IMG/VR virus record: IMGVR_UViG_3300044701_000569
Span: 62,001-126,000 of that record
Length of the DNA stretch: 64,000 nt
Strand: one strand, 5' to 3'
Positions within the stretch are counted from its first letter, which is position 1, and each line of letters starts with the position of its first letter. The position numbers and the translations under genes are program-made. Shown here one piece after another: positions 46,575-63,333 of this stretch. Below the pieces are notes generated by a model. That model searched no databases. It saw nothing but the letters and a program-made list of their open reading frames with translations, and was not told the DNA's origin.

Positions 46575-47018
46575 TTAGATAGCTGTTAATCGCATTACAG
46601 TTTCTGTCGAGTCGTTCTCAATAGTCCACTTGTATCTTGCGTTGTTGAAATCTCTACAAGTACGATTGAATAGTTTCTTAATACGAACCTGTGTACCACC
46701 AGTACCAACAATAGTACCTTGTATTGACATTTCATTAGCTGCTAAAGAACCAACAGCTTTGTCAACTAGTGTGCAAATTCCTACGTTACCTGTACCAGAA
46801 CCGCTTGGTGTTACCTTAGTACCTGCTTTAGTATCGTTTACTAAAAACTTGTTTGAACTACGCTGTCTTAAAATGTAGCCTTCGTCGCTAGCAGAGTTGC
46901 TGGCAACTTTTACGTTTACTGTGATGTTAAAAAAAGTTTCGTTTGATGCTGGTGCATAACGTGTATCGTCAGCGTCTGCTAACCAACCAAAGAATTTCTT
47001 ATTTACTGGACGTCCCAT
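46575..47018 (-). CDS. Hypothetical late protein
   Basis: MGRPVNKKFFG start, strong AAGGAG SD and its own late box at 47086. Confidence 0.7.
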   Translation of the reverse strand: MGRPVNKKFFGWLADADDTRYAPASNETFFNITVNVKVASNSASDEGYILRQRSSNKFLVNDTKAGTKVTPSGSGTGNVGICTLVDKAVGSLAANEMSIQGTIVGTGGTQVRIKKLFNRTCRDFNNARYKWTIENDSTETVMRLTAI

Positions 47019-47085
47019 TTGTTTTCTCCTTTATGTTGACGTTCTAGGTCTACGCAGTGGGTAACTGCATAAGTCTTAGACAAAG

Positions 47086-47093
47086 TATTTATC
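47086..47093 (-). promoter_or_regulatory. Late promoter box (GATAAATA)
   Basis: tatttatc immediately downstream (minus sense) of the pqqA terminator. Confidence 0.6.
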
Positions 47094-47102
47094 ATAAAAG
47101 AT

Positions 47103-58311: not shown

Positions 58312-58530
58312 TTGCCCTGGTCTCTTGACGAGATTCTAGACGAGGTCCGTAATTTTGAAAATCAACAAAAAGAATTAAAGCACGATCTGTTTAAGGTCTG
58401 CTGGTACATGCGCGGCGGCATAACTCTTGAAGAGGCTTACAACTTGTGTGCCGAAGATAAAGAAATTATTGGAAAAATAATTAAGGAAAACCTAAACACT
58501 ACTAAAGAGTCAGGTCTTCCTTTCTTTTAA
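58312..58530 (+). CDS. gp51-like ORF, probably the -1 frameshift extension of the upstream gene
   Basis: WYMRGGITLEEAYNL segment; poor TTG start; the frame is open back to the T TTT TTC heptamer at 58294-58300. Confidence 0.6.
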   Translation: MPWSLDEILDEVRNFENQQKELKHDLFKVCWYMRGGITLEEAYNLCAEDKEIIGKIIKENLNTTKESGLPFF

Positions 58531-59354
58531 ATGTAGTTTATGCCGACAACTTCGTTGGTGTTTTCGACTAAACGAATACGTAATCCTAGATCAGCCCAAC
58601 CTAAGTTGTACTCTCTAAGCATCTTAGTAATAGCATAATACACGCTCTGTGTTAAGAAACGCTCGCCCTGCTTGGCATTTGCTGTCCAAGCTGGCTGAAG
58701 TTTAGAAATATCATATCCTGCTTTAGCAAAATTCATAATCTTTTGAGCAGCAAACACACCACTCTCCTTGTCGCCCTTGGCTAGTTTAGCTAGATCAGCT
58801 TGTATGCCTTGTGACATCTTGTCAGGCAGTGGTTTTGTTCCACTTTGAACTGTACGTATGTTGCTTTTAGCCTTTTCAAACGAATCACTACCAGCTTTAT
58901 TAGCTGGATTAGCAGAGGCAGCTGGATCGTTAAGTGTAGGTTCTACTCTACTGCCAGTAGGTGCAGTAGCTTTAGCTGGTGCTGCTGTAGCAGCAGCTGG
59001 CTTAGCAGGAGCCGCAGCAGTTGTTGGAGCACTAGCTGGCTTAGCAGGAGTTTGTAGTGCTGTAACTACAGATTTTTGATCCTGTGGTGAAAGAGATTTT
59101 AGAACATCAAGGGCTTTTTGTGCAGCTGGCGGAAGTTGAACATTACCTTGTTCGTCATCACCAGCACCTGCTACAGTTGATTTACCAGCTTGATAGCCTT
59201 TTTTAAGGGCACTACCTAAACCAGCTACTCCTCCAGCAACAGCACCAGCAGCTTTAGCAGCAGTTCCTACGCCTTTACCGATAGCAGAACCTATTTTATT
59301 TAAAACCGGTCCTTCTACTAGTTCAGATTCATTTGTAATATCAGAAATTTTCAT
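58527..59354 (-). CDS. Ala/Pro-rich candidate internal head protein
   Basis: MKISDITNESELVEG N-terminus with an L-x-E site, a low-complexity linker and a late box at 59383-59390. Confidence 0.5.
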   Translation of the reverse strand: MKISDITNESELVEGPVLNKIGSAIGKGVGTAAKAAGAVAGGVAGLGSALKKGYQAGKSTVAGAGDDEQGNVQLPPAAQKALDVLKSLSPQDQKSVVTALQTPAKPASAPTTAAAPAKPAAATAAPAKATAPTGSRVEPTLNDPAASANPANKAGSDSFEKAKSNIRTVQSGTKPLPDKMSQGIQADLAKLAKGDKESGVFAAQKIMNFAKAGYDISKLQPAWTANAKQGERFLTQSVYYAITKMLREYNLGWADLGLRIRLVENTNEVVGINYI

Positions 59355-59517
59355 TTGTTCAAGTCCTAAGCTCTATATGATTTATTTATTCAAAGTCTTT
59401 TTGATTTACTATTTAAGTATCAACTACGTTGATACGTGTTTTCGCTATCGCTCAAACACATATTTTTCTTTTTAATAGTGATATAAGAGCAATATCACGA
59501 AGTGATATTGTTTAAAC

Positions 59518-59877
59518 TTCATGTAGATTGTTTCAGTCAGACGGAACCTACTACGGTTCCATCCTATCTCTGGTTTTCATGTGAGTAGTCACAGCCGAGA
59601 CATGGAAGTAGGTGTTTGTGCGCTGCTCAATGGGCTCTGACCTTTCCCAACCTACGCCGACATTACAGTATTTCTACTGCTACCCTCCGCTTCGTTCCTA
59701 GTGCAAGAGGTTTTTATGAGCAATATGCGTTTTTCGACTGCCAACAGTCAATCTACATCAACCAGTAGCCCAATTTGTCTGATGGCCTGCCTCCCATAGG
59801 GGGTTGATCAATGTGTTACGTGTCCGGATATCACCCCGGTTTTTCCACAGCGGTATTACTAAACTGGCCCGCCAACC
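59518..59877 (-). ncRNA. Large, highly structured non-coding RNA (family unassigned)
   Basis: No ORF. Helices at 59521-30/59749-58 (10 bp perfect), 59540-63, 59581-92, 59608-13/59650-55, 59666-79 (GAAA loop), 59736-49 and 59824-39. More GC-rich than the flanking intergenic DNA. Confidence 0.7.
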
Positions 59878-60318
59878 TTAAGTGTTGGTATGATTTGCCT
59901 GTTCTAGAAGTGCCTTACGCAATTTATCGGAACCGCCCACTCTACAATTAATAATTCCGTTATAATATTCATCCGTCTCTAACACACGGCGGTCAAATTG
60001 CTCTCTTGCCTCGATATATGACATTTCTGCCTTGGAAGTGCAGTAGTAAAGTATTTCTCTAGTGAAGTTTTCTGGACCTAATTGTGCAACGTCAGCGTTG
60101 AGTCTATCGGATGAACCCCAATAATCACGCCAGTCGCTTTCTACAGTGGAACGCCTTTTGAGTTTTTTGCCTTTTAGCGGAGGTTTTGTACGTTTGAATT
60201 GTGCAAGTTTTTTGCCTATGTACTTTTGTCCAGTTTTTAGATTGGTTATAAGGTAAACAAAGCCTATTTTGCCTTCTGGTATTTGTTCAACGATGTTACC
60301 TTGATAAGTCCACTGCAT
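59878..60318 (-). CDS. GIY-YIG (Seg-like) nuclease
   Basis: GFVYLITNLKTGQKYIGKK, YWGSS, FTREIL, EAREQF and YYNG motifs. Confidence 0.85.
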   Translation of the reverse strand: MQWTYQGNIVEQIPEGKIGFVYLITNLKTGQKYIGKKLAQFKRTKPPLKGKKLKRRSTVESDWRDYWGSSDRLNADVAQLGPENFTREILYYCTSKAEMSYIEAREQFDRRVLETDEYYNGIINCRVGGSDKLRKALLEQANHTNT

Positions 60319-60326
60319 GAGTGTAC

Positions 60327-60548
60327 TTACCGAGGCTCGTTTTTAGCTGCCTCTCTCTTGAGTTGTTTAACTTCATTGTGTGATTTGTGTATTTCTTCCA
60401 TGCGTAGTTTAGCGAGCCTGCGTATTTCTCTTAAATGCCTTCGTGCAGCTACATGGTTACGCACCGAATTACTCAGCTTAAAGCGATCGTGAGTCTTAAA
60501 ATACTCAAGGTATGCTTGAATCAGTAATTCGTGCGTGTCTTTTTCCAT
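60327..60548 (-). CDS. Hypothetical basic helical protein
   Basis: 73-aa ORF coupled to gp46. Confidence 0.6.
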   Translation of the reverse strand: MEKDTHELLIQAYLEYFKTHDRFKLSNSVRNHVAARRHLREIRRLAKLRMEEIHKSHNEVKQLKREAAKNEPR

Positions 60549-62323
60549 TAGTCTACGTAGTCAATGTCATTGGCGTAACTGGTAAAGCCGTTTTCCTTAA
60601 TAACCTTAAGGACATTGTTAACTCTTCCAATTAATTCATCCTTGTGGCTGATTAGATAGATATTCTTTTGACGTTCTCTACCCATTTTCTTAAGGACACC
60701 TAGTGAATTTTCAACTCCCGCAGTATCCATACCACTGTCAATTAGCTCATCAATGAATAGTAAGTTGATATTTTGATATAAACTTTCCCATACATCACGG
60801 AATGCAAAGCTGAGACCTAAAATAAGTCTATTTCGTTCACCGCGGCTTAGGTTATCAAAGTCTAGGTCCTGTCCTAGCTGTGTGATTTCAACATTTAGGT
60901 CGTTTAAGAACACAACTTGATGTGGAAGTCCTAGTTTGTCTAGATAGTACGTTAGTCTATTGTTTAGATAGGCTAGATTTTGATCAATAATCTTCTTGCG
61001 GATAAAGCTATCCTTGTTAGTCAGTAGTTTTAACAAGAACTCTTGATGTTCCCTGTAAGAAGTTAGATCGTTAACAGTTCCCCAAGTTATTTCTTGGATA
61101 GCAGTCTTGTTTAACTCGTCAATCTGCGCCTGATAAGGATCGTCTTCGTTAAGTTTTTGTTCAAGTGCCTTCTTAAGATTCTCAACATTGTTGCGATGAT
61201 CGTAGGCTTCCTTAGCAGTTTCATAGAAAGTGTTTGGCTTGCCGTTGATATTTCCTATTTGAGCAAGAGCCATTACAGTATCGCTCAACTTTGTGCTAAC
61301 TTCCTGATAGTAAGTATCTGCATCACGCAGTTCCTTGCTCTTTTTAGCTAGAATTTCCTGCTTCTTGTCAGCATGCAAGGGCTGATTACATGCATAGCAA
61401 ACAGCTTCTTCTAAATCTTCAATGTCTTTTTCGACCTTTTTAACAGTCTTTTCTGCTTGCAGTAGAGCACTGTCCAATGTGCTTTTTTCTTTATTAAGAG
61501 CCGTAATTTGCTTGTTAAGTTCCGACCAATTAGCCAGCTTTTCGTGATTTTCAAGCTCTTGATCAATGTCAAGTTGCTCTAATTCTTGTATAGCTTGCTG
61601 TAATTTTGCCGCATCTTGTGCTGTTTTTGACTGCCAAGCCTTCTGTGTAGACTTTAAACTTTCAATAGTTGTCTGTATTTTAGCATTAGCTGCTTGCAGA
61701 GCATTGATTTTCAGTGTCTCTTCTGTGATTGCATCTTTGGTTAGTTTTACTTGTTCTTTTAGAGACTCTGCCTTCTCAGAAAGTATAGTAATACCTAACA
61801 GTTGCTCAATAATAGCTCTTTGATCGTTCTGCTTCATAGCTAGGAACGGTTCAGTATAGGTGTTTAGTGCAAGGATATGTTTAAACATATCATGGCTCAT
61901 GCCTAACAGTGTGTCAATAGTGTTCTGCGTATCTCTACTGTCACCTTGGCTTTCGTCTGTGAGTTCTTGTTCTTCGTCGTTTATATAAAATTTAAGAAGA
62001 TTAGGAGAGCGTCCGCGCTCAATCCTATAATCAACACCACTTTTTTCAAAGTGCAGTGTAACTAACATGCCTTTGTTGTTGGTTTTGTTAATTAAGTTAT
62101 TCTTCTTAATGTTAGTTAATGCTTGGCCGTACAGTGCATAACTGAGTGCATTAATAATAGTAGTTTTGCCTGTACCGTTACGAGAACCAGTATCGTCACC
62201 TCCTTGATCTAAGTTTTCGCCAAGCACTAGAGTTAGCTGTTCCTTGTTAAAGTTAACAGCTTGAGTTTGGTTGCCCACACTCATAAAGTTTTTTACAGTA
62301 AGATCTTTAATTTTTATTGTCAT
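60548..62323 (-). CDS. gp46: Recombination endonuclease ATPase subunit (Rad50/SbcC-like)
   Basis: KNFMSVGN, NGTGKTT, CYAC zinc hook, LSRGERNR signature and LLFIDELIDSG. Confidence 0.95.
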   Translation of the reverse strand: MTIKIKDLTVKNFMSVGNQTQAVNFNKEQLTLVLGENLDQGGDDTGSRNGTGKTTIINALSYALYGQALTNIKKNNLINKTNNKGMLVTLHFEKSGVDYRIERGRSPNLLKFYINDEEQELTDESQGDSRDTQNTIDTLLGMSHDMFKHILALNTYTEPFLAMKQNDQRAIIEQLLGITILSEKAESLKEQVKLTKDAITEETLKINALQAANAKIQTTIESLKSTQKAWQSKTAQDAAKLQQAIQELEQLDIDQELENHEKLANWSELNKQITALNKEKSTLDSALLQAEKTVKKVEKDIEDLEEAVCYACNQPLHADKKQEILAKKSKELRDADTYYQEVSTKLSDTVMALAQIGNINGKPNTFYETAKEAYDHRNNVENLKKALEQKLNEDDPYQAQIDELNKTAIQEITWGTVNDLTSYREHQEFLLKLLTNKDSFIRKKIIDQNLAYLNNRLTYYLDKLGLPHQVVFLNDLNVEITQLGQDLDFDNLSRGERNRLILGLSFAFRDVWESLYQNINLLFIDELIDSGMDTAGVENSLGVLKKMGRERQKNIYLISHKDELIGRVNNVLKVIKENGFTSYANDIDYVD

Positions 62324-63333
62324 TATAACCCGTGATATATTTCTAGCAGTGTTTTCTTGTCAAAATTATCAGTATCAAGTTCTGATATTTCGCCCGCAAC
62401 AATTTGATCTACGGATTCAAATCCGCTGATATCTAAATTAGTTGAAATTTCTTCAATCTGTTTCTGCGGTATCAGTGTAATTTCTCTACAGTCATATGTA
62501 GACATAAATGTTTCTTTGATAAAATTTGCTTCTTCGTAGCTGATTGGAATGTCCAGAGTAACACGCAGATACATCTTTGATTTGATTATTTCTTCTGTCT
62601 TATCCAATAGCTTTGACAATGATACAGTCCTATACTTAGGACAATTATCCCAATTAATATACTCTGGTTCACCGTCATTTTCTTTATCAAGAATCATCAT
62701 ACCTCGTGCATCGTCCCATGCATCTGCATAGTTGTGCGGAAATGCATTGCCAATGTAGTGTATTGCGCCCTGTTGTTGACGCTTATGAAAGTGTCCTGAG
62801 AACACATACTTTTGATGTTTGAAGTGTTCTGCTTTGAGATCGCCGTGATCAGGCATCTGTACCATAGCATTCATATAAAAGTAAGGAAGTTCAAAATGTC
62901 CAAACATATATTTTGTTTTGATCTTTTCGATATTCTTCCATTCGTCTCCAACAAGCCACGGAATTAGTGCAACATCTTCACTAACCATAATCTTGTCTAC
63001 AAATGTGATGCCTGGTATGTGTCTACCAAATGCAGTTGATGAAACATCACGCTTATCTTTGTAGTACATGTCGTGGTTTCCAACAAACATGTAGAAGTTT
63101 TCAAAGGCAGCACCTAGCTTTTCCATGCTGCGAATAGTTGCATCCATAGTTGCTAGATTGAGGCTGTTTCTATTGTGATGCCAGTCTCCACAAAAAATGC
63201 CTGTTTCACAACCCTGCTCCTTAGCAGTGGCAATGAACCAGTCTACGAATTCTTCGCAGTCATTGTTGTGTACTGTAGAGTTACCTTTCAATCCAAAGTG
63301 GATATCAGTAAATACTGCTGCCTTTTTAAACAA
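62323..63333 (-). CDS. gp47: Recombination endonuclease nuclease subunit (Mre11/SbcD-like)
   Basis: DIHFG, GDWHH, GNHD and SGHFH metallophosphoesterase motifs. TTG start. Confidence 0.95.
   Translation of the reverse strand: MFKKAAVFTDIHFGLKGNSTVHNNDCEEFVDWFIATAKEQGCETGIFCGDWHHNRNSLNLATMDATIRSMEKLGAAFENFYMFVGNHDMYYKDKRDVSSTAFGRHIPGITFVDKIMVSEDVALIPWLVGDEWKNIEKIKTKYMFGHFELPYFYMNAMVQMPDHGDLKAEHFKHQKYVFSGHFHKRQQQGAIHYIGNAFPHNYADAWDDARGMMILDKENDGEPEYINWDNCPKYRTVSLSKLLDKTEEIIKSKMYLRVTLDIPISYEEANFIKETFMSTYDCREITLIPQKQIEEISTNLDISGFESVDQIVAGEISELDTDNFDKKTLLEIYHGL

What the first reader, a model, noticed from the sequence alone, without database searches (positions are those of the whole stretch)
59518..60330. 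GIY-YIG nuclease followed immediately by an ornate RNA of about 360 nt: a candidate nuclease-RNA system
Seen: structure starts directly after the nuclease TAA (59878-59880), with no promoter or terminator in between. There are two abutting domains. A 5' domain is closed by GCCAG-UU-UAGU pairing with GCUA-CUGGU (about 59869 to 59761). A 3' domain is closed by a perfect 10-bp long-range helix (59749-58 with 59521-30) and holds at least five nested helices, one with a GAAA loop. A GTAAGTA late-type box (60324-60330) precedes the nuclease, so both are probably one transcript. Known: large ornate ncRNAs (GOLLD, ROOL) occur in phages, and nucleases with cis-encoded RNAs exist (IscB/HEARO, TnpB). Inference: this is either a member of a large phage ncRNA class or an RNA partner, guide scaffold or regulator of a small GIY-YIG nuclease. 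Family membership cannot be established by eye.
Basis: partly seen in the sequence, partly recalled or inferred. Interest (0 to 1): 0.78.

Follow-up and report, generated by a model that had tools for sequence, protein, structure and literature searches.

The report
Modular phage RNA trailing a nuclease gene
The stretch after the small GIY-YIG nuclease gene of this T4-like jumbo phage is a real pseudoknotted RNA of about 370 nt, one type of a large and mostly undescribed family of phage RNAs, whose function is unknown and which carries two copies of a lineage-specific 7-base word that always match each other.

Summary
The support is comparative. More than 330 related viral contigs carry it and more than ten helices show compensatory changes. 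The single sequence folds no better than shuffles (z = -0.13).

New findings:
- The last codons of the upstream ORF pair with a hairpin loop 140 nt downstream, and three positions covary.
- There is a long-range helix that crosses two other core helices (pseudoknot).
- Two 7-mers, 59582-59576 and 59524-59518, are identical to each other in nearly every relative while differing between lineages. No complementary partner was found.

No Rfam family matches the window. Sister loci carry other RNA types with the same 3' module, and one of these types begins with the Rfam orphan motif Polynucleobacter-1.

The upstream gene is usually GIY-YIG, sometimes a PD-(D/E)XK nuclease or a 95-aa ORF. Three copies have no nuclease directly upstream, and the GIY-YIG family occurs without the RNA in other phages.

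Best reading (0.45): an autonomous non-coding RNA transcribed as the tail of the nuclease mRNA. A nuclease-RNA partnership is unproven (0.25).

The parts
60548..62323 (-). gp46-like SbcC/Rad50 recombination nuclease subunit, upstream gene of the operon
   Evidence: Pfam AAA_23, SMC_N. 48% identical to gp46 homologues of jumbo phages Phosso and PA5oct.
60327..60548 (-). orf73: small basic helical protein with an Arg-rich stretch. Conserved neighbour, fast-evolving, no family match.
59878..60318 (-). 146-aa single-domain GIY-YIG nuclease (SegE-type domain, phrog_447). Its last codons and stop codon lie inside the RNA.
59517..59888 (-). Type-A structured RNA, full conserved extent (about 372 nt)
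   Evidence: Conservation and covariation in relatives. No Rfam match.
59883..59888 (-). P1, 5' strand: CCAACA, codons -3 to -1 of the nuclease ORF. It lies 2 nt before the UAA of the conserved UAAGG.
   Evidence: Pairs with 59746-59741. Variants CUAACA/UGUUAG, ACAGCA/UGCUGU and GCAACA/UGUUGC are all compensatory. 93% of cells are standard pairs against 21-29% when slid.
59755..59877 (-). 5' domain. Pa is 59873-69/59853-49 with a conserved GCCAG loop. Pb and the Pb' hairpin are 59839-36/59827-24. Pc is 59814-06/59763-55 and encloses a variable arm. The whole domain is replaced by other sequence in some subgroups.
59736..59753 (-). Pd hairpin (GAUUG/CAGUC). Its loop, 59746-59741 (UGUUGG), is the 3' strand of P1.
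   Evidence: 93% of cells paired, 4 compensatory pairs
59717..59722 (-). Long-range helix, 5' strand. It pairs with 59629-59624 and encloses Pe, Pf and the 5' strands of Palpha and Pbeta, giving a pseudoknot topology.
   Evidence: All 6 pairs have compensatory changes. Examples: 59720/59626 UA:74 CG:44 GC:11; 59719/59627 AU:60 UA:46 CG:19.
59684..59710 (-). Pe helix (CCUC/GAGG plus GC/GC) closing the conserved 12-nt loop ACUAGGAACGAA (59702-59691)
   Evidence: 59708/59686 CG:90 GC:31 UA:4, all standard pairs. The loop is near-invariant.
59665..59680 (-). Pf: variable-length hairpin (GAAA loop in the window), insertion hot spot of 10-120 nt in relatives
59630..59663 (-). Invariant core block. 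It contains GUAGG (Palpha 5' strand, 59655-51, pairing with CCUAC 59612-08) and GGUCAGA (Pbeta 5' strand, 59642-36, candidate partner UCUGACU 59541-35).
   Evidence: Invariant in 32 of 32 sequences. Palpha: U-A changes to C-G in the L213 group, 100% paired. Pbeta never varies informatively.
59576..59586 (-). Unit 1: invariant ACUC followed by 7-mer copy 1 (ACAUGAA, 59582-59576)
59540..59563 (-). Pdelta/H1: 9-bp hairpin between the two units. Its sequence differs in types B and C, but a stable hairpin is always present.
59518..59528 (-). Unit 2: invariant AUCU followed by 7-mer copy 2 (ACAUGAA, 59524-59518)
   Evidence: Identical to copy 1 in 144 of 148 type-A sequences and in 44 of 48 with a non-consensus word
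59490..59510 (-). H2: 9-bp hairpin with UUC loop and weak U tract, terminator-like, probable 3' end of the transcript
   Evidence: Terminator scan. All 9 pairs show compensatory changes.
58527..59354 (-). Next gene downstream: hypervariable, with an N-terminus resembling the T4 internal-protein capsid-targeting sequence. Relatives have an ATAAATA box between the RNA and this gene. Not part of the RNA.
   Evidence: by eye; not tested further

Best explanation
The window carries one type (type A) of a modular family of phage non-coding RNAs about 350-450 nt long. The RNA works as its own unit. It is normally made as the 3' tail of the mRNA of a small nuclease gene, at the end of the gp47-gp46-orf73 operon of an uncultured clade of aquatic T4-like jumbo phages.

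Shown. The RNA begins inside the last three codons of whatever ORF lies upstream, with the stop codon sitting in a conserved UAAGG. It folds into a 5' domain, a pseudoknotted invariant core and a 3' module. It ends at a hairpin that looks like an intrinsic terminator. The 3' module has two equivalent units, ACUC-N7 and AUCU-N7, each followed by a stable hairpin. N7 varies between lineages but is the same in both units of one RNA.

Inferred. The native fold can form only once ribosomes have left the ORF end, because P1 uses those codons. The two single-stranded N7 words are read by one trans-acting partner that changes with the lineage. That partner could be a nucleic acid with a 7-nt complement or a dimeric sequence-specific factor. 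On this reading the RNA acts as a scaffold, decoy or sensor. The nuclease gene would then be a habitual neighbour that supplies transcription, not an obligate subunit.

The biochemical function remains unknown.
For: RNA reality and architecture.

Autonomy:
- L439 is a free-standing copy behind a TATAAT-like box, next to a divergently transcribed gene, with twin GGAUAAU words.
- L116 sits in an unrelated phage context, 300 nt after the nearest ORF; an HNH-endonuclease ORF lies about 1.3 kb upstream. It keeps P1 (ACAGAA/UUCUGU) and the twin words.
- L395 also lacks an upstream nuclease.

Three unrelated ORFs end on the RNA's own UAA: GIY-YIG, PDDEXK_15 (PF24608, E 2e-27) and a 95-aa CxxC ORF.

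The GIY-YIG family occurs without the RNA in 339 Synechococcus-phage records and in Melnitz, Moby and Felix-like phages.

Family and modularity: loci first scored as 'nuclease only' carry other RNA types with the same 3' module. Type B starts with Rfam RF01718 at 40-86 bits and was found in 120 or more contigs.

RNA type does not follow nuclease phylogeny. The window's nuclease is 88-90% identical to those of type-C loci but 75-79% identical to most type-A loci.

Twin words.

Co-transcription: no signals between ORF and RNA, and an RNA-library contig spans both.
Against: Adjacency to a nuclease gene is far more constant than expected for a mere neighbour. About 96 of 98 type-B loci and nearly all type-A loci have a nuclease directly upstream. 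Adjacency survives insertion of 2-3 genes between gp46 and the nuclease.

When GIY-YIG is replaced, the replacement is another small single-domain nuclease.

No trans partner for the 7-mers was found. No discrete processed RNA species has been shown. In the one RNA library holding the exact strain, the nuclease ORF was assembled but the RNA was not (low depth).
Confidence: 0.45

Rival explanations
1. Nuclease-RNA system. The RNA is a functional partner of the small nuclease, which has no nucleic-acid-binding domain of its own. It would act as targeting scaffold, inhibitor (antitoxin-like) or activator. In the boldest form the two identical 7-mers are a pair of guides that position a dimeric nuclease on both strands of a target.
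For: Near-constant adjacency over more than 330 loci, down to 55% nuclease identity and despite gene insertions upstream. The ORF end is a strand of RNA helix P1. GIY-YIG is replaced non-orthologously by a PD-(D/E)XK nuclease of similar size. Both folds are catalytic-domain-only. The 7-mers are variable but matched inside an invariant scaffold. No partner was found in cis.
Against: The RNA exists without a nuclease directly upstream. The nuclease family exists without the RNA. In L206-type loci a 95-aa ORF separates nuclease and RNA. RNA types are swapped between phages with near-identical nucleases. The phage genomes are not depleted of their own 7-mer: 39 observed against 47 expected, 69 against 63, and 23 against 16.5. 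The complex prediction tool did not fold this kind of complex, so it gives no evidence either way.
Confidence: 0.25
2. Cis-acting 3' element of the operon. The structure controls the fate of the nuclease or operon mRNA. It could protect against 3' exonucleases or Rho, set read-through of hairpin H2 into the downstream late gene, or couple ORF translation to RNA refolding through P1.
For: Position at the 3' end of the operon, ending in a terminator-like hairpin. Ribosomes finishing the ORF must open P1. Rfam's source paper listed the sister motif Polynucleobacter-1 as probably cis-regulatory (PMC2864571).
Against: About 370 nt with 34-nt invariant blocks and pseudoknots is far more than known 3' stabilisers or terminators need. 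Free-standing copies have no upstream ORF. In relatives an ATAAATA late-promoter-like box lies between the RNA and the next gene, so that gene probably has its own promoter.
Confidence: 0.15
3. Ribozyme or intron relic. The RNA is a self-processing RNA derived from an intron-like mobile element that travelled with a homing-type nuclease. The two identical 7-mers would mark two reaction sites recognised by the same guide.
For: The helix order resembles P3-[P4-P6]-P7-P3'-P8-P7' of group I introns (comparison from memory). An in-frame UAA at the 5' boundary and an end in ...AUG resemble the T4 td intron (from memory). It is associated with nuclease families typical of mobile introns.
Against: No group I or II model matches two divergent members at E <= 10. 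There are no exons: the flanks are an ORF end and a terminator hairpin. The P1 helix has no G-U pair at a candidate splice site. No guide complementary to the 7-mers exists in cis. No skipping joints were seen in RNA-library contigs, although they did not cover the 3' module.
Confidence: 0.08
4. Not an RNA at all: a decayed coding region or a DNA-level element such as an origin or recombination site.
For: The two identical 7-bp direct repeats next to conserved boxes resemble the matched crossover cores of recombination sites. The locus sits next to recombination genes. Many assemblies break here.
Against: No frame is open in relatives. Indels are confined to hairpin tips. More than 40 base pairs show strand-specific compensatory changes including G-U. 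The boxes flanking the 7-mers are not inverted repeats.
Confidence: 0.02

Closest known systems
Polynucleobacter-1 RNA (Rfam RF01718; Weinberg et al. 2010, PMC2864571), an orphan motif of unknown function from Burkholderiales and freshwater/estuary metagenomes
   Same: It occupies the same slot, directly after the orthologous nuclease gene, in sister phage contigs. By eye, its first hairpin (GGYURGCG stem, GCYARUUU loop) and its ACUA...GGACGAAG motif have counterparts in the window RNA. Type-B RNAs that start with it continue into the same core and the same twin-7-mer 3' module as the window RNA.
   Different: The Rfam model does not match the window (no hit at E <= 10; the best hit in the whole genome is elsewhere at 8.8 bits). 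The model covers only the first 141 nt of an RNA of about 430 nt. The window's 5' domain has a different helix layout.
omega/reRNAs of IscB, IsrB and TnpB (HEARO RNA): nuclease genes with a large cis-encoded structured RNA
   Same: A compact nuclease gene with an ornate RNA abutting or overlapping the ORF end, transcribed together.
   Different: No HEARO match. The nuclease folds are different (GIY-YIG or PD-(D/E)XK). There is no 16-20-nt variable guide at an RNA end. The RNA and the nuclease each occur alone.
Group I introns carrying GIY-YIG homing endonucleases (T4 td / I-TevI)
   Same: T4-like phage, GIY-YIG gene next to a pseudoknotted RNA of 250-400 nt, stop codon at the RNA's 5' boundary.
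   Different: No intron model match, no exons, and the nuclease ORF lies upstream of the RNA rather than inside a loop. The nuclease lacks a DNA-binding domain and is conserved like a core gene of the clade.
T4 gene 60 bypass element with MobA (matching take-off and landing codons); also matched crossover cores of site-specific recombination and leader/body TRS of nidoviruses
   Same: These are the known cases where two short sequences in cis must be identical, not complementary, because one third party pairs with both.
   Different: Here 7 nt match, the region is untranslated, and no recombinase or reverse transcriptase is present. This is an analogy only.
Type III toxin-antitoxin RNAs (ToxI/ToxN)
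   Same: A protein toxin gene and a repeat-containing structured RNA in one transcription unit separated or ended by a terminator.
   Different: ToxI is upstream of the toxin and is made of full 34-40-nt tandem repeats cut by an endoRNase toxin. Here only 11 nt are repeated, the RNA is downstream, and the proteins are DNA-nuclease folds.
GOLLD / ROOL large ornate phage-associated RNAs
   Same: Large, ornate, phage-borne, function unknown.
   Different: No model match. Smaller in size and with different motifs.

Membership tests
GIY-YIG nuclease, SegE-type domain (PF19835) | Profile match above the curated cut-off over the whole domain | tested here: met
   120.1 bits against a cut-off of 25; residues 3-123 match profile positions 1-123 of 123
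GIY-YIG nuclease, SegE-type domain (PF19835) | Conserved GIY, YIG, Arg, Glu and Asn catalytic positions | tested here: met
   G19 F20 Y22, Y33 I34 G35, R56, E88 and N120 are invariant in 9 sequences down to 41% identity. Assignment to catalytic roles is by knowledge of the family.
Free-standing homing endonuclease (Seg/Mob type) | Separate DNA-binding domain and sporadic presence among close relatives | tested here: not met
   The protein is 146 aa, catalytic domain only. It is present in 39 of 43 closest gp46 relatives with enough sequence and diverges in step with gp46.
Polynucleobacter-1 RNA (RF01718) | Covariance-model score at or above 37 bits | tested here: not met
   No hit in the window locus at E <= 10. 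The best hit in the genome is 8.8 bits, elsewhere. The criterion is met by sister loci L005, L008, L013 and L022 at 40-86 bits.
GOLLD, ROOL, HEARO, RNase P, tmRNA, riboswitches (all Rfam 15) | Covariance-model match | tested here: not met
   Gathering threshold on the whole window and E <= 10 on the locus and on L116 gave only chance hits. ARAGORN found no tRNA or tmRNA in the window.
Group I intron | Model match; exons that join into one gene; U-G pair at the 5' splice site in P1 | tested here: not met
   No match. The flanks are an ORF end and a terminator hairpin. P1 has six Watson-Crick pairs and no G-U. The sensitivity of the models to atypical introns was not checked with a control.
Group I intron | Self-splicing activity, guanosine binding site in P7 | not testable with these tools
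   The helix order is P3/P7-like, but the candidate P7 (Pbeta) never varies.
Group II intron | Domain V and GUGYG 5' end; IBS1 directly at the splice site | tested here: not met
   No RF00029 or D1-D4 match. No domain-V-like hairpin was seen. An IBS/EBS-like 6-bp pairing is present, but it is also formed as a local hairpin in the L255 type (by eye).
RNA-guided nuclease system (IscB/TnpB-like logic) | Obligate co-occurrence of nuclease and RNA | tested here: not met
   RNA without nuclease: L116, L395, L439. Nuclease family without RNA.
RNA-guided nuclease system (IscB/TnpB-like logic) | Variable guide segment whose targets are avoided in the own genome | tested here: inconclusive
   Variable matched 7-mers exist. 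Own-genome counts are not depleted in three genomes. Seven nt may be too short for this test if two sites are required.
RNA-guided nuclease system (IscB/TnpB-like logic) | Physical nuclease-RNA complex | not testable with these tools
Type III toxin-antitoxin | Tandem full-length RNA repeats upstream of an endoRNase toxin | tested here: not met
   Only box plus 7-mer (11 nt) is repeated, and the RNA is downstream of a DNA-nuclease fold.

The most novel reading that the evidence does not exclude
The RNA is the programmable part of a new kind of phage nuclease system. An invariant scaffold presents two identical, rapidly evolving 7-nt words that place two copies of a domain-less nuclease (GIY-YIG, interchangeable with PD-(D/E)XK) on matching sites of a target. 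This would be an RNA-specified restriction-like enzyme used against hosts or competing phages. A weaker form: the twin words are read by some other lineage-specific trans nucleic acid, which would define a new 'sameness-constrained' RNA recognition mode.
Probability: 0.1. Interest if true: 0.95.

Novelty: new variant of a known kind. Interest (0 to 1): 0.72.

Why it matters
The family is abundant. Only the first 141 nt of one sister type are catalogued, as an orphan motif.

Three features are unusual for a bacterial or phage RNA:
- a helix built from the last codons of a protein gene;
- exchangeable 5' domains on a common core;
- two 7-nt words kept identical to each other through at least twenty lineage-specific versions with no complementary partner in cis.

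The third feature is a clean, testable handle on function, because whatever reads the words must change with them. If not, it is still a large ribozyme-sized RNA of unknown role that is near-universal in a clade of jumbo phages. The result also corrects the genomic context of Polynucleobacter-1: in the phage contigs read here it sits at the tail of a nuclease gene.

Tried and rejected
1. Rfam at the gathering threshold and at E <= 10 on the locus and on L116 gave only chance hits.
2. Decayed C-terminal domain or hidden ORF: no frame is conserved, and the 146-aa length is normal for the family.
3. blastn against 50,697 cultured phage records: only the nuclease ORF of Melnitz phages matched, and the RNA did not.
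4. The downstream flanks of gp46 in PA5oct and Phosso do not carry this RNA. One twin-repeat hit in Phosso is at chance level.
5. Complement of the 7-mers in cis: none at a consistent place within +-700 or +-1500 nt. The best MI partner of each column is its twin.
6. Trans partner by comparing three large genomes: the flanks are too diverged and nothing was found.
7. Promoter-like genome-wide motif: the 7-mer is not enriched (39 observed against 47-72 expected).
8. Self-avoidance of the own 7-mer: none.
9. Template-jumping reverse transcription: no RT gene in the 357-kb genome, and the 58-nt unit has stops in all frames (by eye).
10. tRNA anticodon-loop pairing: no loop complementary beyond codon plus U33.
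11. Association of orf73 with 7-mer type: orf73 identity falls more than gp46 or nuclease identity between different-word pairs (0.56 to 0.41), but orf73 evolves fastest anyway, so this is not interpretable.
12. Nuclease + orf73 + RNA complex prediction: not folded by the tool, so no evidence.
13. My early inference of a compensatory GUAGGUUG/CAAUCUAC helix from L116 was wrong. L116 has a hairpin insertion there, and the L213 group instead supports GUAGG/CCUAC.
14. PDB sequence search for the nuclease and orf73: no relatives.
Full report
**Setting.** The window is part of a 357.6-kb virus record from IMG/VR. On the minus strand the locus reads gp47-like (62323-63333), gp46-like (60548-62323), orf73 (60327-60548), a 146-aa ORF (59878-60318), about 520 nt without an ORF, then a 275-aa ORF (58527-59354). 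The 146-aa protein is a complete single-domain GIY-YIG nuclease (PF19835, E 8e-35; phrog_447), and its catalytic positions are invariant in relatives. The closest cultured gp46 homologues, at 48% identity, belong to the jumbo phages Phosso, PA5oct and Atu_ph07. The genome has 27 tRNA genes and a permuted tmRNA.

**Is the RNA real?** The single sequence gives no evidence: its folding energy equals that of shuffles (z = -0.13), and no Rfam family matches. The evidence is comparative.
- A scan with the nuclease protein returned the 80 best of about 600 related viral contigs, all with the order gp46, orf73, nuclease.
- In about 60 of them the sequence that starts at the stop codon is 68-80% identical to the window, and no reading frame is conserved.
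- An alignment of 32 copies shows invariant blocks up to 34 nt long, indels confined to hairpin tips, and 18 predicted pairs with double compensatory changes.
- An alignment of 148 distinct copies, analysed by mutual information and by pair counts with slid controls, supports the helices listed under 'parts'. For example, Pc has 90% standard pairs with 5 compensatory pairs. Pd has 93% with 4. The long-range helix 59722-17/59629-24 has 87% with 6 of 6. Pe has 94.5% with 3. Slid controls give 15-66%.

Correct:
- The structure begins at the stop codon; in fact it begins 8 nt before it.
- No promoter or terminator intervenes.
- The overall size estimate.

Not supported:
- The 5'-domain closure GCCAG/CUGGU: 71% paired, no compensation.
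- The 10-bp closure 59749-58/59521-30: 80% paired, no compensation. Its 5' strand is claimed by the covarying helices Pc and Pd.

The GTAAGTA heptamer is conserved 5-6 nt before the ATG in many relatives and replaced by TACATAA in others. Whether it is a promoter, a ribosome signal or something else was not tested.

**Feature 1: the ORF end is part of the RNA.** The six bases CCAACA (59888-59883, the last codons of the nuclease) pair with the loop UGUUGG (59746-59741) of hairpin Pd. Relatives carry CUAACA with UGUUAG, ACAGCA with UGCUGU, and GCAACA with UGUUGC. In total 93% of cells are standard pairs against 21-29% for slid controls. The stop codon lies in a conserved UAAGG.

The same boundary is used by three unrelated upstream ORFs:
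- GIY-YIG;
- a PD-(D/E)XK nuclease (PF24608) that replaces it in one subclade;
- a 95-aa CxxC ORF inserted in another subclade.

In L116, which has no ORF there, the pairing is kept (ACAGAA with UUCUGU). The helix is therefore a feature of the RNA, and the upstream genes run into it.

**Feature 2: pseudoknotted core.** The long-range helix encloses Pe, Pf and the 5' strands of two further helices whose 3' strands lie outside it. GUAGG/CCUAC is supported by a U-A to C-G change. GGUCAGA/UCUGACU is invariant and so untestable. From memory, the order resembles the P3/P7 arrangement of group I introns. However, no intron model matches and there are no exons.

**Feature 3: twin 7-mers.** The 3' module reads ACUC-N7, a stable hairpin, UGAC, AUCU-N7, then a terminator-like hairpin. 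In the window N7 is ACAUGAA, at 59582-59576 and at 59524-59518.
- Across 148 type-A sequences the two copies are identical in 144.
- Among the 48 sequences with a non-consensus word, 44 have both copies changed in the same way. In 10,000 shuffles the mean was 7.7 and the maximum 18.
- Six of the seven positions change in concert, position 6 is always A, and the flanking positions vary independently.
- The strongest covariation partner of every N7 column is its twin.
- No complementary 7-mer occurs at a consistent place within 1.5 kb.

Further tests came out negative:
- The word is not enriched genome-wide.
- It is not avoided in the phage's own genome, in three genomes tested.
- No reverse transcriptase gene was found.
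- No matching tRNA anticodon loop was found.

Two sequences that must be the same, rather than complementary, imply a third party that reads both, or a strand-exchange between them. I could not identify either.

**A family, not a single RNA.** Loci that first looked like 'nuclease without RNA' carry other GC-rich non-coding stretches of 400-450 nt.
- Type B begins with a full match to the Rfam orphan motif Polynucleobacter-1 (RF01718, 40-86 bits). It continues into a related core and the same 3' module, with its own twin words such as AGAUAAU, GGAUAAU, GGAUGAA and GCAUAAU.
- Type C (L003, L012, L044, L049, L054) shares its 5' part with the RNA of the PD-(D/E)XK subclade and again has the 3' module.
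- RNA type does not follow nuclease phylogeny, so modules are exchanged between related phages.

The source paper lists Polynucleobacter-1 only as a probable cis-regulatory motif of unknown function (PMC2864571). No other paper in the library mentions it.

**Linkage to the nuclease.** For:
- Nearly every copy with enough upstream sequence follows a nuclease gene.
- This holds in a distant clade where radical-SAM-like genes separate gp46 from the nuclease.
- An RNA-library contig spans orf73, the nuclease and the RNA down to 59615. DNA carry-over is not excluded.

Against an obligate partnership:
- L439 is free-standing behind a TATAAT-like box, and L116 and L395 lack an upstream nuclease.
- The nuclease family is common in cyanophages and other phages without this RNA.
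- Records of 161 and 131 kb first flagged as lacking the RNA do lack type A elsewhere, but they have types B and C at the locus.

**Conclusion.** The finding is real and more interesting than a generic structured intergenic region, but its helices had to be redrawn. My best reading is an autonomous, modular non-coding RNA expressed as the tail of the nuclease message (0.45). A true nuclease-RNA system remains possible (0.25). A cis-acting 3' element (0.15) and an intron or ribozyme relic (0.08) are less likely. Function is unknown. The twin 7-mers are the best experimental handle on it.

Noticed in passing
window 47016-47094 (-): Match to the Rfam freshwater-2 RNA (RF02980): 55.7 bits against a gathering score of 49.9. 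This is the only gathering-level Rfam hit in the window.
   Followed up: no
window 58527-59354 (-); L003, L005, L008, L010, L012, L017, L049, L054 downstream genes: The gene after the RNA and its counterparts begin MK(I/L)xD(I/L)xxE, which resembles the capsid-targeting sequence of T4 internal proteins. The rest is hypervariable (195-707 aa). This may be an injected anti-defence protein locus.
   Followed up: no
window about 59455-59417 (-) and the same place in relatives: Two conserved hairpins (GUGUUUGAGCGAUAGCGAAAACAC and GUAUCAACGUAGUUGAUAC in the window) lie between the RNA and the next gene. They are present with all RNA types. In relatives they are followed by an ATAAATA box like a T4 late promoter.
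   Followed up: partly
window 60324-60330 (-) and relatives: A UAAGUA box 5-6 nt before the nuclease ATG is conserved in many type-A loci. A TACATAA box takes its place in most type-B and type-C loci. It overlaps the orf73 stop codon.
   Followed up: partly
L226-L301 and L003-L082 (contig ends): A large share of IMG/VR contigs stop 0.3-1.5 kb after gp46, inside the nuclease/RNA region. This fits invariant RNA blocks shared by co-occurring strains breaking assemblies, or real microdiversity at the locus.
   Followed up: no
L340, L341, L353, L357, L364, L365, L369: In a more distant clade, two or three radical-SAM-like genes (CxxxCxxC) and other ORFs are inserted between gp46 and the nuclease. 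The nuclease-RNA adjacency is kept.
   Followed up: partly
L255, L302-L314 (e.g. L303 5250-5765): A subclade has a 171-aa PDDEXK_15 endonuclease (also phrog_244, RusA-like resolvase) in place of GIY-YIG. It ends on the RNA's UAAGG. In these RNAs the P1-like helix appears to be a local hairpin.
   Followed up: partly
G000 C1 335163-335596 and tRNA clusters at 16.5 kb and 282-292 kb: The phage genome encodes a permuted (two-piece) tmRNA with tag VAVNDNNFALAA and 27 tRNAs, including three with anticodon CAU.
   Followed up: no
L337 (Sinorhizobium phage Phosso) 6908-7921: A 1-kb GC-rich non-coding stretch lies next to a Holliday-junction-resolvase gene near gp46. It has a sub-threshold match to EGFOA RNA (29 bits, E 0.005).
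   Followed up: partly
L083-L085 (genome contigs): The RNA with gp46, orf73 and the nuclease also occurs on contigs binned into Crocinitomicaceae and Neomarinimicrobiota MAGs. These are most likely phage contigs mis-binned into bacterial genomes.
   Followed up: no
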